64,000 nucleotides of DNA, taken from the IMG/VR virus record IMGVR_UViG_3300036770_006296, positions 124,001 to 188,000 of that record; one strand, given 5' to 3'. The translations under genes were made by a program, and so were the position numbers. Below, piece after piece: positions 3,878 through 56,848 of the stretch; positions within the stretch are counted from its first letter, which is position 1; the number at the start of each line of letters is the position of its first letter. Under the pieces are notes generated by a model, which saw nothing but the letters and a program-made list of their open reading frames with translations, made no database searches and was not told where the DNA came from.

Positions 3878-3915
3878 GAATCATTTTTTTTATCTCTTTG
3901 AATTTTCTATCTTTG
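3878..3915 (+). promoter_or_regulatory. Putative early promoter (representative of 9 copies)
   Basis: GAATCATTTTTTT followed exactly 30 nt later by TATCTTTG (Bacteroidota -7 consensus TAnnTTTG); same geometry at 4281, 18581, 21274, 23699, 24651, 34561, 39148, 56810. Confidence 0.7.
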
Positions 3916-3929
3916 GTAAAAACACAGAT

Positions 3930-4280
3930 ATGGCTTTAAATTATGATCTTAGAGAGATAAAGAGTTATAAGAGACTTTTTGAAAAATCTACAGAAACTGG
4001 AGGATCCAAAATGAAGGATGTTCCAAGGACTATAGTCATGAGCACTATAAGTGTGGGGATGAGAGAAATCACCAAGGATAATTATAGAAAATTCTACAAT
4101 CGGCTTAGTCTGCTTGAGAATGTTTATGGGCATTTTTTCTACGTGAGGAGGAGGGGAGGTAAAATGATTCCTCGACCTATTACTTTAGGTGAAGTGGAGA
4201 GAATGATAGGACTGAAGACTAATGCTTCTGAAATTTCGAGAACTAAGTTCTTAAGTAGAATTGATAAGGATAAATTTTAA
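3930..4280 (+). CDS. Hypothetical protein
   Basis: 116-aa ORF directly behind early-type promoter. Confidence 0.75.
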   Translation: MALNYDLREIKSYKRLFEKSTETGGSKMKDVPRTIVMSTISVGMREITKDNYRKFYNRLSLLENVYGHFFYVRRRGGKMIPRPITLGEVERMIGLKTNASEISRTKFLSRIDKDKF

Positions 4281-4331
4281 GAATCATTTTTTTTAAGGAT
4301 GAAGGATTTCTAACATAGCAAAAAAATAATC

Positions 4332-4673
4332 ATGGAAAAGAAAGAGGTAAGGGTGCTTAACGCAATCCCAGAGAACATGACACTAACTGAATACTTTGAC
4401 TCGTTGGATGTCTTTGGAAAAAGAGAGTTGATTGATGAGCTAAAATACATGGGCGATGTTTATGCTAAGAATTTATCTAGGAATATGATTCTTGCTGGTG
4501 TATCTTGGTTGTGTTCTTTCTTGTGTTATTTTGGAATACAGGAGACTTGGGCAATCTATTACTTGATCGGTATCAATATCCCTTTAACAATCTTCTTTTG
4601 GCTGAATGTTAGAAACTTTACCAACTACAAAGGGGTTGCTAAGCATTTAGAAAAACGAATGGGTGAACAATAA
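4332..4673 (+). CDS. Membrane protein (2 TM)
   Basis: Two hydrophobic segments; behind early-type promoter at 4281. Confidence 0.7.
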   Translation: MEKKEVRVLNAIPENMTLTEYFDSLDVFGKRELIDELKYMGDVYAKNLSRNMILAGVSWLCSFLCYFGIQETWAIYYLIGINIPLTIFFWLNVRNFTNYKGVAKHLEKRMGEQ

Positions 4674-4902
4674 AAATAGCATAATGGTAAAAAGAGGATT
4701 ATCTGGAATTTATTTCAGAGCAAAAAACGAAGAGACGGGGAAATTTGAAAATCTCGTGTTTGAGGACTTATCTGAAGAGCAGCAAGATGAAATGATGAAT
4801 GGGAGATCTGAGGAGTGGCTAAAGAGCTTAGCAAAGCAATTAGCAAATACCCTACGGACCATTGGTGATCAATTTGATATTTCAGTGGGATCAGATGAGT
4901 AA
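4663..4902 (+). CDS. Small hypothetical protein
   Basis: Overlapping operon-style ORF (start may be the downstream ATG GTA AAA). Confidence 0.65.
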   Translation: MNNKNSIMVKRGLSGIYFRAKNEETGKFENLVFEDLSEEQQDEMMNGRSEEWLKSLAKQLANTLRTIGDQFDISVGSDE

Positions 4903-5200
4903 CAAGAAATATAAAAAAATGGAATATAGAATCAAGAGTATCGAATACTTCGACGAACATGGAAAATCTAAATACTTAAATTACTTCATAGAGTATAGAG
5001 TGAAATTTTTATTCTTTTGGGAAAGATGGAAAGAGGTTACTCATTTAAGCTGCGGAATGTGTGATTGTCATAATGTAACAACATACTTTAATAGTTTAGA
5101 GGAAGCAGAAGAATTTGGTAAAAATCATTTGTGTAGTGGAAAAATTTATGACGGGCATGAGATTACCACTATTAAGACTTTAAGTTGTAAATCTGAATAG
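4895..5200 (+). CDS. Hypothetical protein
   Basis: Start moved to ATG 4895 overlapping the previous stop. Confidence 0.65.
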   Translation: MSNKKYKKMEYRIKSIEYFDEHGKSKYLNYFIEYRVKFLFFWERWKEVTHLSCGMCDCHNVTTYFNSLEEAEEFGKNHLCSGKIYDGHEITTIKTLSCKSE

Positions 5201-5201
5201 G

Positions 5202-5516
5202 ATGACTAAAAAGGAAATTGACTTGATAAAACTCAAAGCTCAGTACGAAGTTCTTTCCGAATTAGAAAGTGCATTTCCTGTATCTTCAAAACATGCAGTC
5301 TTCCTATTGATCCAGAAAAAAATGGACCAGCTGATCGCTATCATTGAATCTGATGAAAAAAATCAGAAGAATGAGTTTATTGGTAAATTCTTACAGAAAG
5401 CTATGAAAGATTATAATCTCTCGTATGGTTTACAATATTACAACCTTCTTGCTGAGAAGTCGGATCTTGCTGAAAAAGCCTGGACAAAACACAGAAAAAA
5501 ACAGGTGGTAAAATAG
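5202..5516 (+). CDS. Hypothetical protein
   Basis: 104-aa ORF coupled to previous gene. Confidence 0.7.
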   Translation: MTKKEIDLIKLKAQYEVLSELESAFPVSSKHAVFLLIQKKMDQLIAIIESDEKNQKNEFIGKFLQKAMKDYNLSYGLQYYNLLAEKSDLAEKAWTKHRKKQVVK

Positions 5517-5593
5517 AGAAAGTAAAACACGTTATCGTGGATGTGTGCTAACGTACTGAAACTTTTAATTACTTTTGTATATATAATAAAAAT

Positions 5594-6011
5594 GGGCCCG
5601 CTTTGGATTTGACAGGCGGAGGTAGTTCTTTGAAATGATGCAGGCAGGGTTAGATTGGAAATCCTTAATCACCTATCAAACAATAAACGCAAACGTTTAC
5701 AACGCAGAGGATATGATGAGTATCCCAACTTCTATTACTCGCGTAGCGGTAGCAGAAGAGGCTGAGTTGCTAATGGCAGCTTAACCGGCGGGCCGCACCG
5801 GCCTAGGAACAGAAAGGTGATGGTGGAGTCAGGTCTTACCTTAAAGACCGAAACGGAAATTCGGTTCATCCCGAAGAGTACACAGACCGAGCATTAAGTT
5901 TGTAATAAAAGAAATGCAAAAAAGTTTGTCCGTGTCGAATAACGGAATAAGCCTGTGAATGAGTTTCTTGAGCATTCGATCTGGACGAGGGTTCGACCCC
6001 CTCCGGGTCCA
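5594..6011 (+). ncRNA. ssrA: tmRNA
   Basis: 5' GGGCCCG pairs with 3' CGGGUCC-A (G3.U70 alanine identity); GGAUUUGAC 5' motif; T-arm GAGGG-TTCGACC-CCCTC; resume context AATAAAC-GCA; tag ORF 5689-5784 ANVYNAEDMMSIPTSITRVAVAEEAELLMAA*; CCA not encoded. Confidence 0.95.
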
Positions 6012-6029
6012 CTAGATTTAATCCCACTC

Positions 6030-9572: not shown

Positions 9573-9573
9573 A

Positions 9574-18077: not shown

Positions 18078-18581
18078 ATGAAACATATTAAACTTTTTGA
18101 AAACTTTGATCCTATAAATGAATCCGACTTTGTTGTTGATAACTATAAAATGAGTGCAACAAAAGACGGTGAGATACAAGTAGTGGACACTGCTGCTAAT
18201 AAAACTTATGTTTACGTTGTTAGTGCAGGTGTAGTTGGGATAAAAGTTAAGGATTTCCCAGAGGGTAATTCTATTCTAGTTAGTGCTTTAGGTAAAAGCA
18301 TAACTAGTCCTCTTTCTAAAGAAGGGACAACAATTAAATCCATCAAGGAAAATTTAGGGAAGTCTAAAATAAAGTTCGATCTTCCTGGTGCATCACTCAC
18401 GCTGACATGTAAAACCGGATGTGAAAAATCTGCAGATAATGTTGCTAACATAAAAGTTACTGCGGAAGAAATGGATATAGATTTGAGTGATGTACTCGAT
18501 TCAGCAAAAGAAGCAGGGCACAATGTCATGAAAGCGGTAGAGGGAGGAGCAGATAAATTAAAATCGCTCCTTAAATGGTAA
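18078..18581 (+). CDS. Hypothetical protein, CTS-like N-terminus
   Basis: MKHIKLFENFDPINE. Confidence 0.8.
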   Translation: MKHIKLFENFDPINESDFVVDNYKMSATKDGEIQVVDTAANKTYVYVVSAGVVGIKVKDFPEGNSILVSALGKSITSPLSKEGTTIKSIKENLGKSKIKFDLPGASLTLTCKTGCEKSADNVANIKVTAEEMDIDLSDVLDSAKEAGHNVMKAVEGGADKLKSLLKW

Positions 18582-18632
18582 AATTGTTTTTTTCACTTTA
18601 GTTTAATTTCTACATTTGTAAAAATAAATTAA

Positions 18633-18830
18633 GTGAGAAAAATGAAATTACATCTGATAACCATTCTTGTAGTAGCAACAGTGCTTTCAATTTTGTACTT
18701 TTTGTTAATAAGTCCAACTATAATGTCTTTTATTCTTTTGGTAGGCATAATATCATTAGGCACGTGGGCTTTGATTAAATTTTATAAATTTGTCTACGCG
18801 ACAGTTAAAAATCTAGTTGGAAATGAATAA
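18633..18830 (+). CDS. Small membrane protein (2 TM)
   Basis: Hydrophobic; behind early-type promoter 18581-18618. Confidence 0.65.
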   Translation: MRKMKLHLITILVVATVLSILYFLLISPTIMSFILLVGIISLGTWALIKFYKFVYATVKNLVGNE

Positions 18831-21271: not shown

Positions 21272-21324
21272 CGGAATCTTTTTTTTATTTACTTTATAAT
21301 CTCTACCTTTACAAAAAATAGAAT

Positions 21325-21801
21325 ATGACTTATATATCCTTTACTAAAGTAGATCTACCTTATGGATGGCTAGGAAACATGTCACCTTATCCAGTAAAAT
21401 ACGATGGTAAGATCTGGAGGACAACAGAAGCTCTCTTTCAGGCTCTTCGGTTCAACGATGATTCTATAAAAGAAGCTATAAGAAACGAGAAAAGTCCAAT
21501 GGGGGCTAAATTAAAAGCTAAGTCTCTTATGAAATTAGATCCATCTAAGGTTTGCGTTTCCCCTCTTTCTGATACTGATTTGGAAAATATGAGAATGTGT
21601 ATTAGACTTAAATTGGAACAGCACCCTCATTTACTTAGCGAGTTATTAAAGACTGGAGGCTCCAAAATATACGAGGATGTTACTTCACGTGGTAAAAGAG
21701 GTAGTAATCTATTCTGGGGAGCTCTAATGGAGAATGGGGCATGGATAGGAGAAAATCATTTGGGAAAAATATGGGAGGATATTAGAGAATCTTACAGATA
21801 A
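21325..21801 (+). CDS. NADAR (YbiA/gp30.3-like) family protein
   Basis: GWLGNMSPYP, TTEALFQALRF, FWGA...GENHLGKIWEDIRE. Confidence 0.9.
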   Translation: MTYISFTKVDLPYGWLGNMSPYPVKYDGKIWRTTEALFQALRFNDDSIKEAIRNEKSPMGAKLKAKSLMKLDPSKVCVSPLSDTDLENMRMCIRLKLEQHPHLLSELLKTGGSKIYEDVTSRGKRGSNLFWGALMENGAWIGENHLGKIWEDIRESYR

Positions 21802-22222: not shown

Positions 22223-22348
22223 AGTCAGGTGGCGGAATTGGTAGACGCATAAATAAAGGTTAACAGTAAGGATAACGTAGAGTAACCTTGAAATACCCAT
22301 AAGTATAGCTCATAAGTTATCATACAGGTTCGAATCCTGTCCTGACTA
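22223..22348 (+). ncRNA. tRNA-like RNA with non-canonical, expanded central region
   Basis: Acceptor AGTCAGG/CCTGACT plus discriminator A; D-arm GCG-GAATTGGTAGA-CGC; T-arm ACAGG-TTCGAAT-CCTGT; 126 nt total with 75-nt centre. Confidence 0.75.
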
Positions 22349-23691: not shown

Positions 23692-23747
23692 AATTAATAA
23701 ATCCTTTTTTATAAATATCATTTTTCTCTATCTTAGTAGAAAACAGA

Positions 23748-24041
23748 ATGATAGATTATCTAAAATCCCAGGGATACTACGAAATAAGAGAAATTAATTC
23801 CAGGGGAATCTGCGGATTGATGGATTTTATGTTCACTACAGGACTTGTGATAGGAATGGACAGGATTGGCTATTTCGGAAGGTACTGTTATAAAACTAGG
23901 CAAGAGGCTCTAGATGCCCTTAATAAATGGGATGGATCAGGAGATCCTCCCGGAAATTGGATAAAATACAAAGGATCTGGCGGGGAAAGAGAGAATCCCA
24001 ATAATACTAATGGATGTTTAAATTGTTCTAAAAATGGATAA
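23748..24041 (+). CDS. Hypothetical protein
   Basis: Behind early-type promoter 23699-23736. Confidence 0.7.
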   Translation: MIDYLKSQGYYEIREINSRGICGLMDFMFTTGLVIGMDRIGYFGRYCYKTRQEALDALNKWDGSGDPPGNWIKYKGSGGERENPNNTNGCLNCSKNG

Positions 24042-24648
24042 GATTTTTTTACCCGAGGATCTAATTGATATGGTTTCTAAACAAAGAGATTCTTTTTCTC
24101 ATCTTATGGCTTTAAGAGATAAAGGAATGGAGCTCTACAAAAGATACGATTCTAGAGAAAAATTTAGGAGCGGTGTTTCTTGGCATGTTCCAACTCAATC
24201 TCTTGTAGATTTACTTAAATTACATTCTCCTTTAGTTTCTGTGGGAAGTGGATTTGCATACACAGAAAGTATAGCCAAAGAACAAGGGGCAGATATTATA
24301 GCAACGGATTTAAAACCGAACAAAGAAAATGCGTGGTGTAGAGATGGCGAGTTCTTTTGTGATGTCGAAGAAATAGATGCAGTTTCTGCAGTCAAGAAAT
24401 ATAAAGAACGGAATGTATTTATGGCTTGGCCTCCTTATGATACAGACATGGCTTATAATGTAGCTTTAAATATGATGCCCGGATCAGTCTTGATATATGT
24501 CGGAGAAGGATGGGGAGGATGCAACGGAGACGACGAATTTTTCCAATATCTTAGCGATCAATTTGAGGAGATTGATGATCTAGCGATTCCTAAATGGTTC
24601 GGATTGAATGATTATTGTTCAGTTTATCGAAAAAAAGACAAAAAATAA
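24034..24648 (+). CDS. Class I SAM-dependent methyltransferase-like protein
   Basis: LVSVGSGFAY motif I, DIIATD, DAVSAV, FMAWPPY, LIYVGE. Confidence 0.65.
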   Translation: MDKIFLPEDLIDMVSKQRDSFSHLMALRDKGMELYKRYDSREKFRSGVSWHVPTQSLVDLLKLHSPLVSVGSGFAYTESIAKEQGADIIATDLKPNKENAWCRDGEFFCDVEEIDAVSAVKKYKERNVFMAWPPYDTDMAYNVALNMMPGSVLIYVGEGWGGCNGDDEFFQYLSDQFEEIDDLAIPKWFGLNDYCSVYRKKDKK

Positions 24649-24716
24649 AGAAATCCTTTTTTTATAAAGATCCAATATTCTAACTTAGCAGACAATTTAA
24701 ATTAAAAATATAAAGA

Positions 24717-33784: not shown

Positions 33785-34561
33785 ATGAAACACATAAAGA
33801 ACATACAAGAATTTAATCACCTTTATGAACAGTTATTTGCTGCTGATATTGCAAAATTTAACAAATTGATGGGTATATCAGTGGAAGAAACCGGTATGGA
33901 GGAACCAAATATATCTCCTGCTGAAAATCCTTCTGGTTCAGGGTCAGCCTTTGCTTCTGTTGTTAAACTTAACACCAGTCAGTTAGATGAATATGGATCA
34001 ACTGTTGGGATTAGTGAAAAAGGAGATAATGCTCCATTACAGCAGCCAGCAAGAGGGCCTTTAGGAAATATAGTAAATTCAGCTTATGCTAACTTAAATG
34101 TTTCAACTAGAAAAATACCAGGGACTCTCGGAGGTAATTTAGGTTGTGCAGCAGCAGTTTCCATTATATTTTATAGAGCTACTGGATACGCAATAGCTGG
34201 TTCTGGAGCTATCACACTAGGCACCGCTCACATGTGGAACCATTTTGAAAAAGAAAGCAGAAATCCCAGCGGAGTTTGGCAGAAAATAACTAATTGGAAG
34301 ACTGACTCACAGCCTGGAGATATAATATTAACATCTAGAGGGTCTAAAGCAGGACACGTGGGTGTTGTTGTAGAGGGAGGTAACATTATATCAAATTCTT
34401 CTGGAGGATTCCAAGGAGATAAAAAAGGACAGATCGAGCTAAACTATAATCTAAACACATGGCAAAGTGTTGCTAATAGAAATCCACAGCAAACTGCTTC
34501 TTTTAGATATAAAGGACCCTATAAAAACACCTGGGGTAAAACGGAAAAACCAGTAGCATAG
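33785..34561 (+). CDS. NEQLF-module protein 3, NlpC/P60-like papain-fold domain
   Basis: Start moved to 33785 (MKHIKNIQEFNHLYEQLF); GGNLGCAAAVS (Cys), QPGDIIL, GHVGVV (His), ISNSS. Confidence 0.75.
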   Translation: MKHIKNIQEFNHLYEQLFAADIAKFNKLMGISVEETGMEEPNISPAENPSGSGSAFASVVKLNTSQLDEYGSTVGISEKGDNAPLQQPARGPLGNIVNSAYANLNVSTRKIPGTLGGNLGCAAAVSIIFYRATGYAIAGSGAITLGTAHMWNHFEKESRNPSGVWQKITNWKTDSQPGDIILTSRGSKAGHVGVVVEGGNIISNSSGGFQGDKKGQIELNYNLNTWQSVANRNPQQTASFRYKGPYKNTWGKTEKPVA

Positions 34562-34612
34562 AATCATTTTTTTATTGGTGCTTTAATCTCTATATTTGGA
34601 CAAAAATCATTT

Positions 34613-34837
34613 ATGGGAGAAAAAGTAATCAAGGTAAAAGACAATTACCGAACGAATCCGGAAAGCCACATTCCTGGCGGATCCGTAGTGGAAACCTTTA
34701 ACGATAAAGGTATAAGATTAGTTTACGATAAGATTAAAAATCCGGGCGCATATATCAGGAGAATTACTAAGGATGAATCTATAATCAGGGTATATGTAGA
34801 CGGGGAACTTAAATTCGATAGGAATGGAGAACAGTAA
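34613..34837 (+). CDS. Small hypothetical protein
   Basis: Behind early-type promoter 34561-34598. Confidence 0.7.
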   Translation: MGEKVIKVKDNYRTNPESHIPGGSVVETFNDKGIRLVYDKIKNPGAYIRRITKDESIIRVYVDGELKFDRNGEQ

Positions 34838-38695: not shown

Positions 38696-39149
38696 TGTAA
38701 AAATAAAAAAGAGGATGAAGACATCGGAAAAATATAGACATATAGGGTATTCGTATCCTGGAGTACCTAGCGGATGGAAGCCTATAGTTGAGAAGACAAT
38801 AGTAGAGATAGAAAGAAAAATGTGGCCTAGATGGATTCCATTGTTTGTTAAAAGATGGATACACTATCTAGCTACAGGAAACAGTGTGGTTAGGGTTAGA
38901 AGTAGATTTTGGTATAAGATAAGAACTAAGCTAACAAGGGGTCAAATGGTAACTGATATTAAAGACAAGTTTGCTACTCTTAGAATATATGGACATTTTC
39001 ATGAGGAGATAGAAAAGATAATAGAGAAAGCAGAGGATAACTGTTACCGCACTTGTGAAAAATGTGGGGGAAAAGAAAAAGTTAGAAGCGTAGGGAAAGG
39101 ATGGATATACAATCTTTGTAAACCTTGTAGATTTTCTAAATCTAAATAA
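38682..39149 (+). CDS. Hypothetical phage protein with C-terminal Cys cluster
   Basis: IKDKFATLRIY...TCEKCG...LCKPC. Confidence 0.7.
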   Translation: MIMNNVKIKKRMKTSEKYRHIGYSYPGVPSGWKPIVEKTIVEIERKMWPRWIPLFVKRWIHYLATGNSVVRVRSRFWYKIRTKLTRGQMVTDIKDKFATLRIYGHFHEEIEKIIEKAEDNCYRTCEKCGGKEKVRSVGKGWIYNLCKPCRFSKSK

Positions 39150-39189
39150 ATCCTTTTTTATTCTTTAGTAGAATTTCTATTTTTATATC

Positions 39190-40008
39190 ATGAAAGTATT
39201 GACGTTGGGAGATGTGCACGGAAGAGATAGATGGATGTTTCACACCCATGGAAGCCCTTATGAGTTTAATAATTGGATGACTATGATTGGAAAAGGGGTC
39301 CCCGCGGATGATGTAGAATTCTGGAAAGAAATGCCATATTTACAATATGACAAAATTGTTTTTATTGGAGACTATGTTGACAGCTTTGATATTAGCAATG
39401 TTACAATCCTAGACAATCTTAAAAAGATATTGTTTTTTAAAAAAGCATTACCAGATAAAGTAGTTCTTTTATTGGGAAATCATGATATTCAATATTTTGT
39501 TCCTAATGAAATATGCAGCGGATATAGAGCAGAAATGAAACCGGATCTTTATCAGTTATTTACAGAGAATAAAGAATGTTTTAAAGTTGCTCATTTAGAA
39601 AAAGATAATACCGGTATTAAGTATCTTTGGACACATGCAGGTGTTACTAATGGATGGCTAAAAGATGTTTGTAAGGATATTAATAATCCAAGATATAGGC
39701 ACTATGAAATAGCTAAAGACTTTGATCCTAATGATCTGGAGAAATTTATAAACGATCTATTTGAACTCAGAGTTGATAATATATTTAATGTAGATGCACA
39801 TAGTGGTGGTTATAGCTTGTGGGCTGGTCCTTTTTGGGTTAGACCAACAATTCTAAATAATTATCCTCTAGAAGGTATTAATCAGATAGTTGGACACACA
39901 CCGCAAAAAACTGTCGAGCATATTAAGTGTGGAGATGTTACTCATTATTTAGTAGACTGCCTTTTTGACGATTGTGATGATGTTTTAGTTCTAGATATAG
40001 AAAAATGA
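39190..40008 (+). CDS. Metallophosphoesterase (calcineurin-like)
   Basis: GDVHG, GDYVD, LLGNHD, THAG, VGHT; behind early-type promoter. Confidence 0.9.
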   Translation: MKVLTLGDVHGRDRWMFHTHGSPYEFNNWMTMIGKGVPADDVEFWKEMPYLQYDKIVFIGDYVDSFDISNVTILDNLKKILFFKKALPDKVVLLLGNHDIQYFVPNEICSGYRAEMKPDLYQLFTENKECFKVAHLEKDNTGIKYLWTHAGVTNGWLKDVCKDINNPRYRHYEIAKDFDPNDLEKFINDLFELRVDNIFNVDAHSGGYSLWAGPFWVRPTILNNYPLEGINQIVGHTPQKTVEHIKCGDVTHYLVDCLFDDCDDVLVLDIEK

Positions 40009-42705: not shown

Positions 42706-44472
42706 ATGTCTACTCTATCTAAAATCTCTCTGGTATTATCTGCTTTAATAATGTCTATTTATTTTAGTATACAATCTCTATTAGTTTTCAATTATATCGA
42801 TTATACGGAATCTTTGGGTAGATTTGAATATGGATGTTTCGTTTTATTTGTCCCACTTTTTTCGATAGTTGTTAGAGAGTTTATAATAAAAAATAAGAGG
42901 AGTATTAAATTAAATATCTATGGTAAAAAATTAAATGACGTTCTTGTGAAGCAGTCGCATAATAGATTATTCTATAATGGAAATCTATCAGAGGCTGCTA
43001 AAGAATTAACTAAAGAGGTCACACAATCCATTAATGTTGAGAGATGCTCAGTTTGGCTATACAATAGGGATAAAACATCAATAGTTTGCCAACAGCTTTA
43101 TATTAAGTCAGAGTACACTTGGTATCAGGGATCTGAATTACTCGAGAAAGACTTTAGGCCCTATTTTGATGCTTTGAAAAATAATCCTGTCATTGTAGCA
43201 AATAATGCAGAGAAACATCCCTCTACATCTTGCTTTAGTGAAGTTTATTTAAAACCATTGGGCATAAAATCGATGTTAGATGTACCTATCCTGTTTAAAG
43301 GTGATGTAATAGGAGTAATATGTATAGAGAGCTTAGTAAAAAAAGAATGGTGTGAATTCGAGATTAATTTTTCCAAGTTGCTCTCTTCCTTATATACTTT
43401 TTCTTATTCAGTAAAAGAAAACAAAAAACAAGATCAAAAAATAGATGACATTAATAATTTTATAGATGAAGCTGCCCTTGTTTCTAAAACAGACGCAAAG
43501 GGAAAAATTGTATATGTGAATAAAAAATTCGAGGAGGTATCAGGATGGAGTCTGAAAGAAGTAATAGGTAAGGACCACAATATAGTTAATTCAGGTGAAC
43601 ATCCCAAGGAAATGTGGGCAGAAATGTATAAGAGTGTTTTAGTAGATAAAAATATTTGGAATAGGGTTATTACAAACAAAGCAAAAGATGGACATTTATA
43701 CCATGTGGACACTTATATAAAAGCGGAATTCGACACGGAGACTGGAGATCTAATAGGATTTATTTCTATCAGGCAGGATGTAAGTAAAATAGTATATACA
43801 TTACAAGAGATAGACAAGAAAAATACTTATTTAGAACATGCTGCTAAAATAATTAGACATGACATGCACTCGGGAATAAACACCTATATTCCAAGGGGGA
43901 TTAGCTCACTAGAAAGAAGACTTTCCGACGAAGATATAAAAAATCTTAAAATAGAAGCTCCATTAAAAATGATTAAAGAAGGGCTTAGACATACTCAAAA
44001 GGTATATAAAGGAGTTTATGAGTTTACTAATCTTGTTAAAAAGGACGCAGCCCTTAACAAGGATGAAATAGATCTAAAGTATATCCTCGACGATTATCTT
44101 TCTTCGACTGCTTATAAAAGCCAGGTTGATATATCAAACTTAGGAAAGTTTAGTGTCAATGAGGCTCTTTTTTGCACTGCAATTGATAATTTAATAAGGA
44201 ACGGACTTAAATATAATGATAGTAACAACAAATCTGTAAAAATATCAAGAATAGGAAATATTATTTATGTTGAAGACAATGGTAGAGGCTTAACATCTGA
44301 AGAATTTAAGACTCTTTCTAAACCATATACTAGGAAGGAGGGTCAAAAAGAAACCGGTACTGGCTTAGGATTAAATATATGTATATCAATACTCAAAGAA
44401 CACGGATTTTCAGTCGATTGTGAAAAAAAGGTTGAAGGCGGATCTAGAATAAAAATAAAGTTAGATAAATGA
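42706..44472 (+). CDS. Sensor histidine kinase (2 TM-GAF-PAS-HisKA-HATPase)
   Basis: GAF ERCSVWL...LDVPI...IGVICIE; PAS VNKKFEEVSGW...HNIVNSGEH...NKAKDG; H box IIRHDMHSG; N box DNLIRNGLKY; G1 VEDNGRG; G2 GTGLGL. Confidence 0.92.
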   Translation: MSTLSKISLVLSALIMSIYFSIQSLLVFNYIDYTESLGRFEYGCFVLFVPLFSIVVREFIIKNKRSIKLNIYGKKLNDVLVKQSHNRLFYNGNLSEAAKELTKEVTQSINVERCSVWLYNRDKTSIVCQQLYIKSEYTWYQGSELLEKDFRPYFDALKNNPVIVANNAEKHPSTSCFSEVYLKPLGIKSMLDVPILFKGDVIGVICIESLVKKEWCEFEINFSKLLSSLYTFSYSVKENKKQDQKIDDINNFIDEAALVSKTDAKGKIVYVNKKFEEVSGWSLKEVIGKDHNIVNSGEHPKEMWAEMYKSVLVDKNIWNRVITNKAKDGHLYHVDTYIKAEFDTETGDLIGFISIRQDVSKIVYTLQEIDKKNTYLEHAAKIIRHDMHSGINTYIPRGISSLERRLSDEDIKNLKIEAPLKMIKEGLRHTQKVYKGVYEFTNLVKKDAALNKDEIDLKYILDDYLSSTAYKSQVDISNLGKFSVNEALFCTAIDNLIRNGLKYNDSNNKSVKISRIGNIIYVEDNGRGLTSEEFKTLSKPYTRKEGQKETGTGLGLNICISILKEHGFSVDCEKKVEGGSRIKIKLDK

Positions 44473-45074
44473 AAAAAATATTTTTAATTATTATCCTATT
44501 GGGGATAAGGGGATTTTGCTTTTCTCAAAACTTTTATCCGATACAAACAATTTTAAAAGGAGATTCTGTTGTTATATACACGCTAGAACAGTCTCAAGAT
44601 ATAAATCTAATGATACAGAATCAAAAATCATTAAATGTAAGCTATAAGAGCAAATATGAGCACTATCTAGGAAAAACAGACAGTTTAGAAAAAATAGTAG
44701 CTGCGCAACTGTACTTGATTGATAGCTTAAGATTAGTTCAAAAAAATCAAGATAGCTTGGAAAAAAAATTACACACAATAGAAAGTTGGTTAGTAAAAGC
44801 ATCAATCGATAACTCTTACCTCTATATGTCATGGCAGGATTCTAAAATTAAATCGGTGGACCTAACATTATATACTGTTCATTGCAGTATGCAAACAGGA
44901 ACGATAAGAATGGTTAGGAGAGGTCCTAATGATGAATTTTATACCTGGAAAGGAATAAACCACACAAGAAGAGAAAGCCCCTCCATTAACTGGGAATTAA
45001 AATATCCAGAGGAAGATAGGCCGATAGTTAATAATTTACCAGTAGATATCAAAATAAGTCAATATGTAAGATGA
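44469..45074 (+). CDS. Secreted/periplasmic hypothetical protein in two-component cluster
   Basis: Signal peptide ending FCFSQ; overlaps both kinase genes. Confidence 0.75.
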   Translation: MKKIFLIIILLGIRGFCFSQNFYPIQTILKGDSVVIYTLEQSQDINLMIQNQKSLNVSYKSKYEHYLGKTDSLEKIVAAQLYLIDSLRLVQKNQDSLEKKLHTIESWLVKASIDNSYLYMSWQDSKIKSVDLTLYTVHCSMQTGTIRMVRRGPNDEFYTWKGINHTRRESPSINWELKYPEEDRPIVNNLPVDIKISQYVR

Positions 45075-46510
45075 AAAAAATAGTGCTTTTAGTAGTAATA
45101 CTATTCTCTTTCCAGAGCTTTTCTACCGCTCAAGGAATAACCCCGAATAAAAAATCTATAGTTGAAGCTGTTTGGGATCAAGGAATACCAGTTTGTCCTG
45201 ATGACAAATACATATCTTCACTTATCGACAAAGTTGGATTTGATAATCTAAGAAATAATAAAAAACCTATTGATAAGAATGAAGCTAAATTGTGTAGGGA
45301 GATAGGGATTGCTTTTTACAATAGGGGAATGTATGAAGCTGCTGACTGGTATTTAGAAAGAGTCAGAGGATACGTTGAGGTTGTAGAACTCGAGCCGGAG
45401 GTGGTTTTTGAAACACCCAAGCAGGAAGAGGAAGAGGAGGATGTTTCTATAGATGATATAAAAAGTCTAGAAGCGGACAAGGAATTTTTACAAAATCTTC
45501 CTAAAAGTTACGACAACGTTTCTCCCGGTGACATGAAAAAGTTAGCGGACCAAATTGAAGACCAAATAAAAAAGCTCATTGCAGAAAAAGAAGCTTTATT
45601 AAAAAGAAATGCTCCTAAATCTGTTATAGATGCTAAGGATGCTGCTATAGGATCTTTAGGAAAAGAAAAAGAAATCATAGACCTATCTATAGAAAAAGAA
45701 GATTTAGAGGTAGAAGTAGTTGACTTAGAAGACGATAAAAAAGTATTAAGGAAATATTTAATAGGATCCGTTATAGGAATTATTATAGCTATTTTAGCAA
45801 TAATAGCTCTACTACAAAGGAAAACAATAAGAGTAAAAGACGTAGAGCTAGAAAAGCAGTTAGATGATATCAATAAGAAAAATACTTATCTTGAATATGC
45901 TGCTAGAATTATTAGACATGATATGCACAGTGGTATTAATACTTATATGCCTAGAGGCCTTTCCTCTCTACAGAAAAGAATGGATCAGGAAAAAATCGAT
46001 GAACTAAAGATCGGTCCTTCTTTAAAGATGATTTCAGAGGGATTAGCACACACCCAAAAGGTATATAAAAATGTATATGAATTTACAAATCTCGTAAAAG
46101 TTAAGGCAGATTTTAGTACTAAAGAAATAGATCTAAAGGAGGCTTTGGAGAAATATCTAGCTAACACCTCATACAGAAATCAAGTTGTAATAGATGATCT
46201 TGGTTTGGTAAATGCTAATGAGCAATTGTTTTGTAATGCAATAGATAATCTGATTAAAAATGGCCTCAAATACAACGAGAAAAACGACAAATGTGTTAAG
46301 ATATATAAGGAAGTAGATGTAATAGTTGTTGAAGATAATGGTATAGGATTAACGTCTAAAAAATTCGAAGAATTAATCAAAAAAGGCATTGATACAGAAT
46401 CTGATACCGGTATTGGATTAAGTATTACAAAAGCAATTATTGAAGAACATGGCTATTCCATCTTTTGTGAGAAAGTTGAGAATGGCACAAAAATGAAAAT
46501 AAAAATATAA
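45071..46510 (+). CDS. Sensor histidine kinase (signal peptide, coiled coil, TM, HisKA, HATPase)
   Basis: IIRHDMHSGINTY; DNLIKNGLKY; VEDNGIG; GIGLSI; kinase core closely similar to 42706 gene. Confidence 0.9.
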   Translation: MKKIVLLVVILFSFQSFSTAQGITPNKKSIVEAVWDQGIPVCPDDKYISSLIDKVGFDNLRNNKKPIDKNEAKLCREIGIAFYNRGMYEAADWYLERVRGYVEVVELEPEVVFETPKQEEEEEDVSIDDIKSLEADKEFLQNLPKSYDNVSPGDMKKLADQIEDQIKKLIAEKEALLKRNAPKSVIDAKDAAIGSLGKEKEIIDLSIEKEDLEVEVVDLEDDKKVLRKYLIGSVIGIIIAILAIIALLQRKTIRVKDVELEKQLDDINKKNTYLEYAARIIRHDMHSGINTYMPRGLSSLQKRMDQEKIDELKIGPSLKMISEGLAHTQKVYKNVYEFTNLVKVKADFSTKEIDLKEALEKYLANTSYRNQVVIDDLGLVNANEQLFCNAIDNLIKNGLKYNEKNDKCVKIYKEVDVIVVEDNGIGLTSKKFEELIKKGIDTESDTGIGLSITKAIIEEHGYSIFCEKVENGTKMKIKI

Positions 46511-48510: not shown

Positions 48511-49392
48511 ATGCGGGATTTTAAAATAATTAACCGGATAACAAATACCTCTGATAATCTAAACCGATACTTCAATGAAATATCAAAATATGAATTATTA
48601 AGTGCTGAGAAAGAGGCTGAACTTGCTTTTAAAGCTAAGGCTGGTGACGAAAAAGCTAAAGAAGCAATATTAAAATCTAATCTAAGATTTGTTATTTCTG
48701 TTGCAAAATCGTATGTTTCTGGCAACTCCCCACTGGAAGATCTTATATCTGAAGGAAACAAAGGATTAGTAGAAGCAGTCGAAAATTTCGATCCGACTAC
48801 CGGATTCAAATTTATTAGTTATGCTGTTTGGCATATTAGGAAAAACATACTTGTATATCTTAATAATCACACAAGATCCATAAGAATCCCTTCTAACGTA
48901 AATAATGAGATGCGAAAATATCATGCTATAGAGGAATCTTTTATCTCTTATAATGGTAGGGAACCTTCAATAGATGAGATGCTAGAGATAATAGAAAATC
49001 CTGAATATGGGATCCAGATTTCTAACGCCACAATAGATACAATTAAAAACACCCCGTTATCTATTCCTCTCGAAAATTACGGAAAAGAAAATGACGAGAT
49101 TGGCTCTCCTCTAAGTTGGTTGCAATCATCTGAAAATAGTGATGGTATAACATTGAGTGACGATATCAGGAATATTATCTTGCGAGTTCTTTCAGAGTTA
49201 AAGCCTATGGAAAGGGAAGTTACTATTTTAAAATACGGACTTGGAGACTCAAAAGAACCTATGAGCTATAAAGCTATAGGGGAGAAGCTAGAAAAAACAA
49301 CAGAATGGGCTAGGATTATTTCTAAGAAAGCTGAAATGAGGATGAAGGCTATTATTAGGAGAAGAAAAATAAAAGAATTATTCTTCGATTAA
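48511..49392 (+). CDS. Second, divergent sigma-70 family factor
   Basis: NLRFVISVAKSY; DLISEGNKGL; FKFISYAVWHIRK; region 4 TTEWARII. Confidence 0.9.
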   Translation: MRDFKIINRITNTSDNLNRYFNEISKYELLSAEKEAELAFKAKAGDEKAKEAILKSNLRFVISVAKSYVSGNSPLEDLISEGNKGLVEAVENFDPTTGFKFISYAVWHIRKNILVYLNNHTRSIRIPSNVNNEMRKYHAIEESFISYNGREPSIDEMLEIIENPEYGIQISNATIDTIKNTPLSIPLENYGKENDEIGSPLSWLQSSENSDGITLSDDIRNIILRVLSELKPMEREVTILKYGLGDSKEPMSYKAIGEKLEKTTEWARIISKKAEMRMKAIIRRRKIKELFFD

Positions 49393-54228: not shown

Positions 54229-54585
54229 TTAATAAAGATCCTCACTATATAAAGTTCTACTTCCACCTCTTGATCTGTCATTCAGTTGACCCGCGGATTC
54301 AGCAATATTATATCCTTCTTCTCTATCAACAAAACGATTTTTATTAGTTAGAAATCCTTGGATTGATTCTCCAACTTCACCTGGTATGTCTCTTAACCCT
54401 GTAATTGCAACCATTTGATATATGCAATTGCCGTGTCTCCACCCGGATACAACAACACCCCTATCGACATTGTATGGTCTAAAACCTCTATGTTCTAAAA
54501 TATCTGGTTTCTTTAAGGGAAGATCCTTGTACCAAACAGCAGCACATAAAATATACTCGTCCATTATTTTATCTTTAAAAGCCAA
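54229..54585 (-). CDS. Hypothetical phage protein
   Basis: YILCAAVWY...GWRHG...QGFLTNKNRFVDR...LYSEDL. Confidence 0.75.
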   Translation of the reverse strand: MAFKDKIMDEYILCAAVWYKDLPLKKPDILEHRGFRPYNVDRGVVVSGWRHGNCIYQMVAITGLRDIPGEVGESIQGFLTNKNRFVDREEGYNIAESAGQLNDRSRGGSRTLYSEDLY

Positions 54586-54839
54586 TTAGCTAAATGTTCA
54601 TCAATAGTTAATTCGTCCCACTCATAATCAGTGAAACCTTTCCTGCAATATTCACCAAAGTTTATAAGATCTACTGCAGTAAAACCCGGAGTTCTTTTTA
54701 AAACATCCTCGACAACTTCGGGAGATGCCTCCTCACCTTTTGCCTCTATATCTTTCCATTCTTTTTCTATAGATTCAGAATCCATAGAGTTAAATTTCTC
54801 TGCTAACATAGCAGTTAGCTTCATTTCATTTAGGTTCAT
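54564..54839 (-). CDS. Hypothetical protein
   Basis: Overlapping series. Confidence 0.65.
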   Translation of the reverse strand: MNLNEMKLTAMLAEKFNSMDSESIEKEWKDIEAKGEEASPEVVEDVLKRTPGFTAVDLINFGEYCRKGFTDYEWDELTIDEHLANWLLKIK

Positions 54840-55305
54840 ATTCTTTTATTTGTTTTATGTATGCTTCGTATACTGTTGTTCTAGTTGATCCGGTGTTTTC
54901 GTATTTGTCTACAGGAATCCATCTTGTCTCCATAGTGTCTCCTTCTTTTCTTTCACATGGAAATGCTACTATATTCGTGTCTTCTATGTCAGGTCCTTGA
55001 CAAAAAAGCTCTTTCCAAGTTGATTTCTCTAGATAATTTCTTAGAGCGCTCCATGCTTCCATATCGTGTGAGAGCCACATGTTGTCGTCGTGATTCATCG
55101 CATAATCAATCTGTCTTTGTATCTCCTCTGCTAGAGATTTCCCTTGTTGTTCTGAAAGTCTTTTACCAAAGTTTCTAACTAGATCCGACGGGTACATTGC
55201 AGATGCTATTGTGTATCTTCCGCAGAAGTATCTCAGAGAAGACCAAGTAAGATCCCATTCCCAGTCGCTCAATGGTTTAATCTTTTGCTTTTCCTTTGTT
55301 TTCAT
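54826..55305 (-). CDS. Hypothetical protein
   Basis: SLRYFCGRYTIAS motif; overlapping series. Confidence 0.7.
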   Translation of the reverse strand: MKTKEKQKIKPLSDWEWDLTWSSLRYFCGRYTIASAMYPSDLVRNFGKRLSEQQGKSLAEEIQRQIDYAMNHDDNMWLSHDMEAWSALRNYLEKSTWKELFCQGPDIEDTNIVAFPCERKEGDTMETRWIPVDKYENTGSTRTTVYEAYIKQIKEYEPK

Positions 55306-55366
55306 AAAATTTATACTAAAAATGAAGGTTTAAGTTTCTTCTGTAAAAATAAGAGATAAATATAAG

Positions 55367-55693
55367 ATGGAAGGATATGTTTATCTGATTGTTGAGGGTG
55401 ATCATAATGGGGAAGAGAAGTACAAGATAGGAGTAACTAAGAACGACCCCCAGAAAAGACTTAAGAAATTAAAAACGGGTAATTCAAATCAGCTAGATAT
55501 CCTTAAACTTTATAAGAGCAAGCACTATAAAAAGGTGGAAAAAATTCTACACCGAAAATTTATAAGTCAAAGGACATTATCAGGGAACGAGTTTTTTTAT
55601 CTAAGTGACGAACAGGTGTTTGGATTTATAAAGTATTGTGAAGAAGCAGAACACATTATAGAGTCGCTTCAGGATAATCCATTTTTTAAGTAG
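55367..55693 (+). CDS. T5orf172/MUG113-like GIY-YIG-fold protein
   Basis: GYVYLI...YKIGVT...KRLKKL.TGN...E.ILH...EFF.L. Confidence 0.8.
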   Translation: MEGYVYLIVEGDHNGEEKYKIGVTKNDPQKRLKKLKTGNSNQLDILKLYKSKHYKKVEKILHRKFISQRTLSGNEFFYLSDEQVFGFIKYCEEAEHIIESLQDNPFFK

Positions 55694-56153
55694 AGCTAAG
55701 TCCAAAACGGTTAAGTAAAGCCGCACCTTTACATCTTAGTGCTTCTAATATTTTTTCGTCTAGCACTTTATCTAGTTCTTCCCTCGGATTTTCCCTATAT
55801 AGCCTAGCCATTTCTAAAGGATATTCATTAAACGATTTTATAAGATCACATAGGCGATCATATATTTCTGTGCTTCTGCCATCATTTCTATCTGCTATGA
55901 TTTCTCTCCAATTTTCTAGGCAGTCTAGTAATTCTGCCCTTTCATATAGATTAGAGTTTTCCTCCTCTAGGTCTTCAAATTTTGATTTTAGATTATCGAG
56001 GTCTCGCTCTAAATACTCAATCCTCTCCTTTGCTTCCAAAAGTTCAGATAGGTAGTCTTCTTTTGTTTGATTTAATTCTTGATTCTCGTCTTCGAGGCCC
56101 TCTATATAAAGAATAAGCTCCTCAACCTTTTTTTCTTCTAATTTATTAGTCAT
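55686..56153 (-). CDS. Coiled-coil protein with C-terminal KGAALLNRFG motif
   Basis: Heptad-rich acidic N-terminal half; no CTS-like N-terminus. Confidence 0.75.
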   Translation of the reverse strand: MTNKLEEKKVEELILYIEGLEDENQELNQTKEDYLSELLEAKERIEYLERDLDNLKSKFEDLEEENSNLYERAELLDCLENWREIIADRNDGRSTEIYDRLCDLIKSFNEYPLEMARLYRENPREELDKVLDEKILEALRCKGAALLNRFGLSST

Positions 56154-56202
56154 AAAGAATTTTATGCAAATTTAGAAAAAATTTAGAGGAATAAAAAAAG
56201 AT

Positions 56203-56787
56203 TTATTTTCTTTTCTTTCTATTAGCTTTAGCTTGTTGGTAGAGTTTTTTGTCGTGCATTTTTGTAGTCTTTCCTCCAGTTACGAAAGAGTTTACTCTAG
56301 CCATTGCCCATTGCTGTGGATTTGTTCCTGGAATGTGACCAGTTTTCCAAGCAGCATATCCTCTCTTCCAAACTTGTGTGAGTATTCCCTGTGGGAATCC
56401 TGTTTTATCTGACTTCTTTTTAAGTGCTTTTCTGACAGGACTAGTTGGAGAAGATACCCCTTCATTTAAAAAGCCCTCGAATTCTAATAGTTCTGATTCT
56501 GTTAAATGATCGAGGAACTCTATAAATTCATTTTCTAGATCCTCTAATATACTCATGAATTCGTAAGGATCTGTAATTAGGTTTTCTCCAAACATTTGTT
56601 TGTATTTTTTTGTGTATTTGCTGGTTTTAGTCCCCACCTTCTTACCCACGCCCGCTTTGCGCGATTTATAATCTGCATCCCATGGGCCATAAGCGGAAGA
56701 ATCATCGTCTCTTTTATGAGCGTGTTTTTTTATTTCCCTCCGCATCACGTTAGGATTTTTAGTAAGATACTTCTTGGGTAATTTCAT
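56203..56787 (-). CDS. Basic conserved viral hypothetical (DUF5824-like)
   Basis: Start moved to 56787; GILTQVWKRGYAAWKTGH.PG...QQWAMARVNSF. Confidence 0.7.
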   Translation of the reverse strand: MKLPKKYLTKNPNVMRREIKKHAHKRDDDSSAYGPWDADYKSRKAGVGKKVGTKTSKYTKKYKQMFGENLITDPYEFMSILEDLENEFIEFLDHLTESELLEFEGFLNEGVSSPTSPVRKALKKKSDKTGFPQGILTQVWKRGYAAWKTGHIPGTNPQQWAMARVNSFVTGGKTTKMHDKKLYQQAKANRKKRK

Positions 56788-56848
56788 AATGTATTTATCC
56801 AACTCTATAAAAACATTTTTTTTAAACAAATGAATTTTCTAGGTTTGC

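What the first reader, a model, noticed from the sequence alone, without database searches (positions are those of the whole stretch)
3878..56847. Nine bipartite promoters with invariant 30-nt spacing
Seen: RAAWC(A/C)TTTTTT-like elements at 3878, 4281, 18581, 21274, 23699, 24651, 34561, 39148 and 56810. Each is followed exactly 30 nt later by TATCTTTG, TAACATAG, TACATTTG, TACCTTTA, TATCTTAG, TAACTTAG, TATATTTG, TATTTTTA and TAGGTTTG respectively. All precede untagged genes, including sigma 1 and NADAR. Established: the Bacteroidota primary sigma reads TAnnTTTG at -7 and TTTG at -33. Inference: a phage early/middle promoter with a host-like -7 box and a phage-specific upstream T-tract box; this also indicates the host phylum.
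Basis: partly seen in the sequence, partly recalled or inferred. Interest (0 to 1): 0.62.

Follow-up and report, generated by a model that had tools for sequence, protein, structure and literature searches.

The report
Jumbo-phage early promoter family, Bacteroidota type
The nine motifs are real and belong to a family of at least 62 near-identical promoters in an uncultured freshwater jumbo phage of Bacteroidota; each pairs the host-type -7 box with a phage-specific upstream box at a fixed distance, which most likely lets the phage capture the host RNA polymerase early in infection.

Summary
A tenth lies on the minus strand at 56204-56167. Chance predicts 0.06 matches in the window.

The window is part of a 206.6-kb IMG/VR phage contig. 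That contig has 67 matches to the pattern against 0-1 for a backwards control. About 50 of them form a 40-kb array of small genes just upstream of the window.

Main evidence:
- The spacing is exactly 30 nt in 62 of 63 copies.
- 57 of 62 copies face an ORF start within 40 nt, against 16.5% for random positions.
- Nine copies have the ATG exactly 4 nt after the box. That is where Flavobacterium places +1 (PMC6847099), so these genes are predicted to be leaderless.
- The boxes and the spacing are kept in six other large phage contigs, including upstream of sigma orthologues only 66% identical.
- The full pattern sits at background level in 201 Bacteroidota genomes.
- The phage encodes three RpoD-like sigmas. 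One is 52-60% identical to the Bacteroidota primary sigma.

Which sigma reads the family, and whether it is early or middle, remain inferences. I rate it a new variant of a known kind, comparable to T4 early and middle promoters and PeSL cassettes.

The parts
3878..3915 (+). Promoter copy 1. Upstream box at 3878-3889, -7 box at 3908-3915, predicted +1 near 3920. Drives the 116-aa ORF 3930-4280 (no Pfam match).
3840..3861 (+). Intrinsic-terminator-like GC hairpin plus T-run ending the preceding gene, about 17 nt before promoter copy 1. Together they form a terminator-promoter cassette.
   Evidence: read from the sequence; similar hairpins precede about 12-16 of the 62 copies
4281..4318 (+). Promoter copy 2. 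Its -7 box, TAACATAG, is the weakest of the set. Predicted +1 near 4323. Drives the 113-aa ORF 4332-4673.
18581..18618 (+). Promoter copy 3. Its upstream box reads AAATTG rather than AATC. Predicted +1 near 18623. Drives the 62-aa ORF 18642-18830.
21274..21311 (+). Promoter copy 4. Predicted +1 near 21316. Drives the NADAR-domain gene 21325-21801.
   Evidence: Pfam NADAR E=8e-16
23699..23736 (+). Promoter copy 5. Predicted +1 near 23741. Drives the 97-aa ORF 23748-24041 and probably 24034-24648.
24651..24688 (+). Promoter copy 6. Predicted +1 near 24693. Drives the sigma gene 24717-25577. It is conserved upstream of the orthologous sigma in four other phage contigs.
24717..25577 (+). Phage sigma 1, a 286-aa RpoD-like protein with regions 1.2, 2, 3 and 4. 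It closely mimics the Bacteroidota primary sigma: it keeps 99 of 109 host-invariant positions and the host region 4.2 helix TKERxRQ.
34561..34598 (+). Promoter copy 7. Predicted +1 near 34603. Drives the 74-aa ORF 34613-34837 and following genes. An orthologous copy is seen at L003:9895.
39148..39185 (+). Promoter copy 8. The ATG at 39190 lies exactly 4 nt after the box, so the predicted +1 is the A of the ATG and the mRNA is predicted to be leaderless. Drives the metallophosphatase gene 39190-40008. This is the only window copy with the TAGAA-N-TTCTA inverted repeat.
56167..56204 (-). It is on the minus strand, with predicted +1 near 56162. Drives the 155-aa ORF 56153-55686.
56810..56847 (+). 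Promoter copy 9. Predicted +1 near 56852, so the ATG at 56849 is probably not the start. The in-frame ATG at 56864 is the likely start of the ORF ending at 57406.
48511..49392 (+). Phage sigma 2 (293 aa). It is not preceded by this motif, and its region 4.2 helix is changed to TTEWARI. It is a candidate reader of another promoter class.

Best explanation
These are promoters of a jumbo phage that has no detectable RNA polymerase of its own and uses the host core enzyme. Each promoter has two parts.

- The first is a Bacteroidota-type -7 element (T-12 A-11, two non-G bases, T-8 T-7, then TG, AG or TA), preceded by a conserved TC at -14/-13.
- The second is a 12-nt phage-specific box. AATC sits at about -41 to -38, followed by one free base and a run of six to eight T from -36. 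This run occupies the place of the host -33 element but lacks its G.

The distance between the two parts is fixed to the base. Transcription should start 4-5 nt after the -7 box.

I infer that the family is first read by host RNA polymerase carrying the host primary sigma, with the upstream box acting as an extended -33 or UP-like element that out-competes host promoters. The family would thus drive the early programme: about 50 small genes in a 40-kb array, plus scattered genes in the window. The window genes include two of the three phage sigma genes, a NADAR gene and a phosphoesterase. Phage sigma 1 keeps the host DNA-reading residues and could take over the same promoters later. The other two sigmas have altered region 4.2 and presumably read other classes, such as the GATATATA class.

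Shown: the motif, its spacing, its position, its conservation, its absence from host-phylum genomes, and the sigma homology. Inferred: the start site, the timing, and which sigma reads it.
For: Statistics:
- 10 matches in the window against 0.06 expected.
- 67 matches in the 206.6-kb contig against 0/1 for the backwards control.
- Spacing 30 in 62 copies and 29 in one.

Position:
- 57 of 62 copies have an ORF start within 40 nt downstream, against 16.5% for random positions.
- Nine copies (including window 39148) have the ATG exactly 4 nt after the box, and one more has it at 5 nt. No distance between 6 and 10 nt occurs. This matches the 4-5 nt box-to-start distance measured in Flavobacterium johnsoniae (PMC6847099).

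Grammar:
- G is nearly absent at the two free positions of the box, which is the TAHHTTTG rule.
- The last four bases are TTTG, TTAG or TTTA in 61 of 62 copies and never TTAA.

Conservation:
- The same two boxes and spacing occur in six further large phage contigs of 50-248 kb.
- Upstream of sigma orthologues of 66-82% identity, only AATC, the T-run, CTA, TT and GC are invariant, with no indel between the boxes.
- Proteins downstream of array copies are only 30-76% identical between phages.
- In a subclass, the inverted repeat in the spacer is shifted by 2 or 4 nt while the box-to-box distance is preserved.

Host-type reading:
- Sigma 1 is 52-60% identical over its full length to Bacteroidota RpoD.
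- No cellular-type or T7-type RNA polymerase was found in two contigs that are 81% and 85% complete.
- Two sigma genes sit behind the motif. The simplest order is therefore host sigma first.
- 16 of the 31 canonical -7 boxes near gene starts belong to the family, and few other convincing host-type promoters are seen in 115 kb.

Gene content fits an early role: ORFans, NADAR, and a MoxR/vWA pair.
Against: - No transcription start or time course exists. No RNA run holds the sequence.
- The host -33 G is missing.
- 44 of 62 copies deviate at -6 or -5, positions that are nearly invariant in F. johnsoniae promoters.
- The full pattern is at background in 201 host-phylum genomes. The upstream box is thus not something the host sigma is known to use.
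- Sigma 1 and the array sigma share changes in region 2.4 (IME against host ILQ).
- Divergent phage polymerases could escape the Pfam models used.
- Much of the similarity among the array copies could reflect duplication or gene conversion rather than selection on each base.
Confidence: 0.6

Rival explanations
1. The family is a phage-sigma promoter class (middle, or self-amplifying). The -7 box is read by region 2 of a phage RpoD paralogue, and the AATC/T-run box is the -35-type element of that paralogue. The candidates are the array sigma, whose region 4.2 helix is changed to SEERVEQ, and sigma 1. Host sigma would give only a basal start.
For: - Three RpoD-like sigmas are encoded.
- The array sigma and sigma 2 have altered recognition helices in region 4.2.
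- The upstream box lacks the host G and is not found in host-phylum genomes.
- 71% of copies deviate from the host-invariant -6/-5 positions.
- Sigma 1 and the array sigma share derived residues in region 2.4.
Against: - Both candidate sigma genes are themselves behind the motif. Something else must therefore start the circuit.
- No separate set of canonical host-type promoters was found in the 115 kb held.
- An array of about 50 ORFan genes, each with its own strong promoter, is the classic layout of genes read by the unmodified host enzyme.
- Sigma 1 keeps the host region 4.2 helix.
Confidence: 0.2
2. The family works by sigma appropriation, as T4 middle promoters do. The host sigma reads the -7 box, and a phage-encoded (or virion-delivered) activator binds the AATC/T-run box, which replaces the -33 element.
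For: - The architecture matches T4 middle promoters in form: a host -10-type element plus a phage-specific box at a nearly fixed distance (PMC2988021).
- The C at about -38 is invariant in 60 of 62 copies. This suggests base-specific protein contact rather than a generic A/T-rich UP element.
Against: - No MotA or AsiA homologue was found by Pfam in two contigs. These searches had no positive control.
- No candidate activator gene with a different promoter was identified.
- The box sits further upstream (about -41 to -31) than a MotA box (about -30).
Confidence: 0.12
3. The element is not a promoter. The T-run could be the tail of an intrinsic terminator. Alternatively, the element could be a recombination or packaging repeat that happens to lie between genes.
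For: - Strong hairpins lie just upstream of about 12-16 copies.
- Assembled contigs from other metagenomes break and pile up at the copies.
- Cassette order differs between related phages.
Against: - AATC is base-paired in the minimum-energy fold at only 6 of 62 copies, and the mean z-score is only -0.7.
- The element is strictly oriented toward the following gene start and includes a -7 box at fixed distance.
- The set with a 4-nt gap to the ATG makes sense only for a start-site determinant.
- Contig breaks at repeats longer than the assembly word are expected in any case.
Confidence: 0.03

Closest known systems
Bacteroidota primary-sigma promoters (-33 TTTG / -7 TAnnTTTG; revised to TAHHTTTG in Flavobacterium johnsoniae, PMC6847099)
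   Same: The -7 box has TA and TT invariant and avoids G at the two free positions. A/T-rich sequence lies around -18. Leaders are short and A-rich without Shine-Dalgarno sequences. The start is inferred 4-5 nt after the box.
   Different: There is no G in the -33 position. Instead a T-run is preceded by an invariant AATC, and this combination is not found above background in 201 genomes of the phylum. The -6/-5 positions are relaxed to TG, AG or TA. The spacing is fixed to the base. TC is conserved at -14/-13.
T4 early 'uber' promoters (UP / -35 / TGn / -10; PMC2988021)
   Same: Many near-identical strong promoters stand in front of small early genes. They combine host-sigma elements with extra conserved positions upstream, and are thought to out-compete host promoters for the polymerase.
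   Different: The promoter grammar is different (Bacteroidota -7 type). The upstream element is not simply a better match to the host consensus but a distinct box. The reading enzyme has not been tested here.
T4 middle promoters (host -10 plus MotA box; sigma appropriation by AsiA/MotA; PMC2988021)
   Same: The design is bipartite: a host-type downstream element and a phage-specific upstream box that takes the place of the -35-type element, at a nearly fixed distance.
   Different: No MotA or AsiA homologue was detected. The box lies further upstream. The phage encodes full-length RpoD-like sigmas instead.
PeSL promoter-early/stem-loop cassettes of T4-like phages (PMC2839356, PMC4122927)
   Same: Repeated early-promoter cassettes flank small variable ORFs in a hyperplastic region. 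Some copies are joined to a stem-loop terminator. Cassette order and content differ between related phages.
   Different: Only about a fifth to a quarter of copies have an adjacent strong stem-loop. Recombination at the cassettes is not demonstrated, because contig breaks at repeats confound the evidence.
SPO1-type sigma cascades, and RpoD-like sigmas of 'group 2' jumbo phages (PMC13401047 abstract; PMC7824862)
   Same: The host primary sigma drives early genes, phage sigmas drive later classes, and the phage has no polymerase of its own. RpoD-like sigmas acquired from cells are known in jumbo phages.
   Different: Here there are three full-length RpoD paralogues, and one of them is a near copy of the host primary sigma. 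Their promoter assignments are unknown.

Membership tests
Bacteroidota primary-sigma (-33/-7) promoter | -7 element with T-12, A-11, T-8, T-7 and no G at -10/-9 | tested here: met
   TA and T at offset 35 (-7) were fixed by the search pattern. T at offset 34 (-8), where the pattern allowed A or T, is T in 61 of 62 copies. G occurs at 3 of the 124 free positions, against 17% background.
Bacteroidota primary-sigma (-33/-7) promoter | T-6 and G-5 nearly invariant | tested here: not met
   TTTG occurs in 18 of 62 copies, TTAG in 24, TTTA in 19 and ATAG in 1. Each copy has at most one deviation, but 71% deviate.
Bacteroidota primary-sigma (-33/-7) promoter | -33 element TTTG (TTG) about 19-21 nt upstream of the -7 box | tested here: not met
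   The T-run covers that position, but no G is enriched at any nearby offset. The -33 element is itself weak in F. johnsoniae (PMC6847099).
Bacteroidota primary-sigma (-33/-7) promoter | Transcription starts 4-5 nt after the box | not testable with these tools
   No RNA run holds the sequence. The support is indirect: nine copies have the ATG exactly 4 nt after the box, one has it at 5 nt, and none has it at 6-10 nt.
T4-type early promoter class (host sigma plus extra conserved elements) | Many copies in front of small genes, co-oriented, with conservation beyond the host elements | tested here: met
   About 50 copies lie in a 40-kb array, with 57 of 62 next to an ORF start. The extra elements are the AATC box, TC at -14/-13 and a conserved leader.
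T4-type early promoter class (host sigma plus extra conserved elements) | Read by unmodified host holoenzyme immediately after infection | not testable with these tools
   This needs a time course or in vitro transcription.
T4 middle promoter / sigma appropriation | MotA-like activator and AsiA-like co-activator encoded | tested here: inconclusive
   Pfam MotA_activ and AsiA were not found in two contigs that are 81% and 85% complete. The searches had no positive control, and analogues need not be homologous.
PeSL cassettes | Composite of early promoter and stem-loop terminator | tested here: inconclusive
   Strong hairpins lie directly upstream of about 12-16 of 62 copies, including a six-fold repeat of one GC stem-loop. 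The rest have none.
PeSL cassettes | Cassettes mark the breakpoints of gene gain, loss and reordering between related phages | tested here: inconclusive
   Cassette genes are partly reordered between G001 and G210. A 1-kb segment between two copies is missing in four metagenomes. Repeat-induced assembly breaks cannot be excluded.

The most novel reading that the evidence does not exclude
The family may be a private promoter code. Under this reading the AATC/T-run box is read by the altered region 4 of a phage RpoD paralogue, or by a phage protein delivered with the DNA. The phage would then run its early programme on promoters that the host sigma reads poorly and that have no counterpart in host genomes. 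The 12-bp inverted repeat TAGAA-NN-TTCTA overlaps the -7 box in about half of the array copies and is almost absent from the window copies. It would be an operator that shuts the array off while the window copies, including the sigma 1 gene, stay on. Sigma 1, a near copy of the host primary sigma, would then replace the host sigma after the phage inactivates it.
Probability: 0.2. Interest if true: 0.7.

Novelty: new variant of a known kind. Interest (0 to 1): 0.5.

Why it matters
- The motif gives a sequence-only way to mark the probable early regulon of a clade of uncultured freshwater jumbo phages. It also assigns them to a host phylum.
- It shows that the Bacteroidota promoter grammar can be extended by a defined upstream box at fixed distance. 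This can be tested directly with Flavobacterium or Bacteroides polymerase.
- It could yield strong, compact and possibly orthogonal promoter parts for these bacteria, which are hard to engineer.
- The subset with the ATG 4 nt after the box predicts leaderless translation in a phylum whose translation initiation is unusual.
- The three RpoD-like sigmas, one of them a host mimic, make the phage a candidate model for sigma replacement.
- The repeated cassettes may explain how the ORFan array is reshuffled.

Tried and rejected
- **Nucleotide search against known phages.** A search of 24 kb of the window found nothing, so no annotated relative is available.
- **Sigma-70-type promoter scan.** It found 23 sites against 27 expected in the array. 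E. coli-type promoters are therefore not enriched.
- **The -7 box on its own.** It is uninformative in this AT-rich genome: 247 matches against 254 for the control. Only the bipartite pattern carries signal.
- **Terminator reading of the T-run.** Rejected. AATC is paired at only 6 of 62 copies, and GATT lies upstream at 7 of 62 against 5% by chance.
- **RNA evidence.** None of the 24 listed runs is RNA. The DNA occurs in 13 studies of subsurface, freshwater, drinking-water, river and estuary metagenomes.
- **Population variants.**
  - Only part of the variant table was shown.
  - In the two promoters that could be assessed, the two variants fall at degenerate positions (offsets 0 and 21).
  - With about two changes expected in the boxes, this is not significant.
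  - Most joints and loose ends at promoter copies are explained by multi-mapping of the repeat and by unitig breaks.
- **Solved structures.** No Bacteroidota sigma-promoter complex was found that would allow contacts to be assigned.
- **Polymerase and T4 co-activator searches.** RNA polymerase, MotA and AsiA Pfam searches were negative. The last three (T7-type polymerase, MotA, AsiA) had no positive control.
- **Host family.** It was not resolved. The best sigma matches spread over Flavobacteriales, Bacteroidales, Cyclobacteriaceae and Chitinophagaceae.
- **Not run.** The large protein searches were not needed.

Full report
**Observation**

The degenerate pattern RAAWYNTTTTTT-N18-TANNWTWR matches 10 times in the window. 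Dinucleotide-preserving shuffles give a mean of 0.06 and a maximum of 1. The tenth copy is on the minus strand at 56204-56167. It faces the gene 56153-55686 and is divergent from the copy at 56810.

A weight matrix built from the sites separates the ten members (35-42 bits) from everything else in the window (9 bits or less). TC at offsets 28-29 is present in 10 of 10 window copies and was not part of the search pattern.

**Where the window lies**

The assembly that holds the window is an 85,958-bp virus record. It is identical to part of a 206,617-bp IMG/VR contig estimated at 81% complete, so the element is a jumbo phage. Window coordinate plus 124,000 gives the contig coordinate.

In that contig the pattern matches 60 times forward and 7 times reverse. 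The pattern read backwards matches 0 and 1 times. About 50 copies form a one-directional array from 83.1 to 123.1 kb, one copy every 300-900 bp, just upstream of the window. The window holds only the scattered tail of the family.

**Anatomy**

I held 115 kb of the phage and found 62 copies in it.

- AATC is present in 60 of the 62 copies. The following base is free in the window copies and mostly A in the array. The T-run has six to eight T.
- The box-to-box distance is 30 in 62 copies and 29 in one, which has a one-T deletion. Every other spacing gives 0-3 matches.
- Of 63 upstream boxes, 58 have the TA box at +30.
- The two free bases of the TA box are almost never G. The last four bases are TTTG (18), TTAG (24), TTTA (19) or ATAG (1), and never TTAA.
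- About half of the array copies carry a perfect inverted repeat, TAGAA-NN-TTCTA, whose last TA is the TA of the -7 box. Of 29 such repeats in 115 kb, 25 lie in family copies.
- In a subclass the repeat sits 2 or 4 nt further upstream, yet the distance between the two boxes is unchanged. The box-to-box spacing is therefore constrained in its own right.
- Array copies also share a leader resembling TAACCAATTAAA. Window copies do not.

**Promoter behaviour**

57 of 62 copies are followed within 40 nt by the ATG of an ORF of 35 codons or more. The figure for random positions is 16.5%.

The distances fall into two groups. Nine copies have the ATG exactly 4 nt after the box, and one has it at 5 nt. 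No copy has a distance between 6 and 10 nt, and the rest lie at 11-30 nt. One apparent 1-nt case, at 56810, probably uses the next in-frame ATG.

In Flavobacterium johnsoniae the -7 element occupies T-12 to G-5 and the start lies 4-5 nt after it (PMC6847099). The 4-nt group therefore places +1 on the A of the ATG, which predicts leaderless mRNAs. The metallophosphatase gene at 39190 is the example in the window. This gives an internal ruler for the start site without RNA data, but it remains an inference.

The T-run is not a terminator tail. AATC is paired in the minimum-energy fold at only 6 of 62 copies. Genuine GC hairpins do lie just upstream of about 12-16 copies, for example at 3840-3861 in the window and a six-fold repeated stem-loop in the array. 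E. coli-type promoters are not enriched.

**Conservation**

An exact-pattern scan of IMG/VR found multiple copies in six other large phage contigs of 248, 154, 153, 130, 55 and 50 kb. All have the same two boxes and the same spacing in front of ATGs.

The gene for sigma 1 has orthologues of 82%, 79%, 66% and 66% identity in four contigs, and all are preceded by the motif. In the five-way alignment the invariant columns are AATC, the T-run, CTA, TT and GC. There is no indel between the boxes, whereas the spacer and the leader have diverged and the leader has indels.

Proteins encoded behind array copies are only 30-76% identical between phages, while their promoters keep the boxes.

**Host**

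- Sigma 1 (24717-25577) has regions 1.2, 2, 3 and 4. It is 52-60% identical over all 286 residues to the roughly 285-aa primary sigma of Flavobacteriales, Bacteroidales, Cyclobacteriaceae and Chitinophagaceae genomes.
- Shine-Dalgarno cores are depleted before starts (7% against 15% at random), and leaders are 50-63% A. This is as described for Bacteroidota (PMC6847099).
- The DNA occurs in subsurface, freshwater, drinking-water, river and estuary metagenomes from 13 studies.

The host phylum is supported. The host family is not resolved.

**Is the upstream box a host feature?**

The stricter pattern AATCNTTTTTT-N18-TANNTTWG occurs 11 times in 201 Bacteroidota genomes against 7 for the backwards control. 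It does not occur at all in the five genomes with good sigma matches. The phage has dozens of copies in 0.2 Mb.

The box is therefore phage-specific in the sample searched. The true host was not among identifiable genomes, so this does not exclude a host-specific use.

**Who reads it**

No cellular-type or T7-type polymerase was found in two contigs that are 81% and 85% complete. The Pfam models used could miss divergent enzymes.

The phage has three RpoD-like paralogues. I aligned them against 70 host sequences.

| Sigma | Location | Host-invariant positions kept | Region 4.2 helix (host: TKERxRQ) |
|---|---|---|---|
| Sigma 1 | window 24717-25577 | 99 of 109 | TKERxRQ, as in the host |
| Array sigma | about 11.9 kb upstream of the window | 74 of 109 | SEERVEQ |
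| Sigma 2 | window 48511-49392 | 69 of 109 | TTEWARI |

My assignment of contact residues follows E. coli numbering from memory. It is not a test.

Two of the three sigma genes sit behind the motif. Few other host-type promoters are visible in the 115 kb held. The simplest order of events is therefore as follows: host primary sigma starts the family, sigma 1 can sustain it, and the altered sigmas read other classes.

One such class is visible. GATATATA lies 4-29 nt before 22 ORF starts.

Three observations argue against a pure host-sigma reading. The -33 G is missing. The -6/-5 positions are relaxed. Sigma 1 and the array sigma share changes in region 2.4. These keep a phage-sigma reading or an activator-dependent reading alive. 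MotA and AsiA homologues were not found, but those searches had no positive control.

**Comparison with known systems**

In function the family resembles T4 early promoters, which combine host elements with extra conserved upstream information and out-compete host promoters. In form it resembles T4 middle promoters, which pair a host -10 element with a phage box that replaces the -35 element (PMC2988021).

The array of promoter-gene cassettes resembles the PeSL cassettes of T4-like phages (PMC2839356, PMC4122927). Some cassettes include a stem-loop, and their order partly differs between related phages.

RpoD-like sigmas in jumbo phages without a polymerase are known (PMC7824862).

I found no paper describing a Bacteroidota phage promoter of this form. 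The library is limited to open-access papers and preprints.

**Reads**

Contigs from four further metagenomes were laid on 5.9 kb of the array.

- They cover most of the stretch at 85-99% identity.
- They pile up and break at the promoter copies, as expected for a repeat longer than the assembly word.
- They lack the segment 3849-4833 of that stretch, apart from one covered bin at 4243-4439.
- The two variants seen inside assessable promoters fall at degenerate positions. This is too few to be significant.

**Verdict**

The start site, the timing and the reading sigma remain to be shown. It is a new variant of a known kind of system.

Noticed in passing
window 5594-6014 (+): A phage-encoded tmRNA. 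Rfam RF00023 scores 85 bits against a gathering score of 47. ARAGORN predicts a 31-residue tag ending in LMAA.
   Followed up: partly
window 22223-22348 (+): Rfam finds a tRNA match spread over 126 nt (40.6 bits) that ARAGORN did not call. It may be a tRNA with an insertion or intron.
   Followed up: no
window, e.g. 10772, 13580, 17141, 25782, 40912, 49743, 58916 (+); 7074, 31930, 42664, 52213, 52950 (-): A second promoter-like class, (G)GATATATA(A). It occurs 25 times in 115 kb, and 22 copies lie 4-29 nt before an ORF start. Several have the ATG 4-6 nt after the motif. It is a candidate middle or late class read by one of the altered phage sigmas.
   Followed up: partly
window 232, 1323, 27686, 28655 (+); 52213, 52950 (-), and others: Many genes behind the GATATATA class begin with nearly the same N-terminus (MK-H/Y-I-K/R-L-F-E). 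This is either a paralogous family or a shared N-terminal signal.
   Followed up: no
window 48511-49392 (+), and G000 reverse-complement 536-1381 (about 11.9 kb upstream of the window): Two further RpoD-like sigma paralogues, 36-38% identical to sigma 1, with changed region 4.2 recognition helices.
   Followed up: partly
window 42706-44472 and 45071-46510 (+): Paralogous large proteins, 59% identical over 221 residues, that match PHROG 857 and a kinase-annotated PHROG 10912.
   Followed up: no
G001 about 123.2-123.3 kb (about 0.8 kb upstream of window position 1): A run of direct repeats of GGGGGCTAAAA and TGGCTAAAATA units lies in a 455-bp gap between genes, next to the only minus-strand copy at the end of the array. 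It could be iterons or another binding array.
   Followed up: no
L109/L110 (G001 97.5-114.1 kb): A GC stem-loop, CTGGGGAACCCCAG, followed by a conserved 17-nt linker, recurs six times directly upstream of promoter copies. This gives composite stem-loop/promoter cassettes.
   Followed up: partly
L109:9793-12485 and L109:13433-14941: The array contains a MoxR-type AAA ATPase followed by two paralogous vWA (CobT-like) proteins of about 500 aa with glycine/tryptophan-rich N-termini. Each has its own promoter copy.
   Followed up: partly
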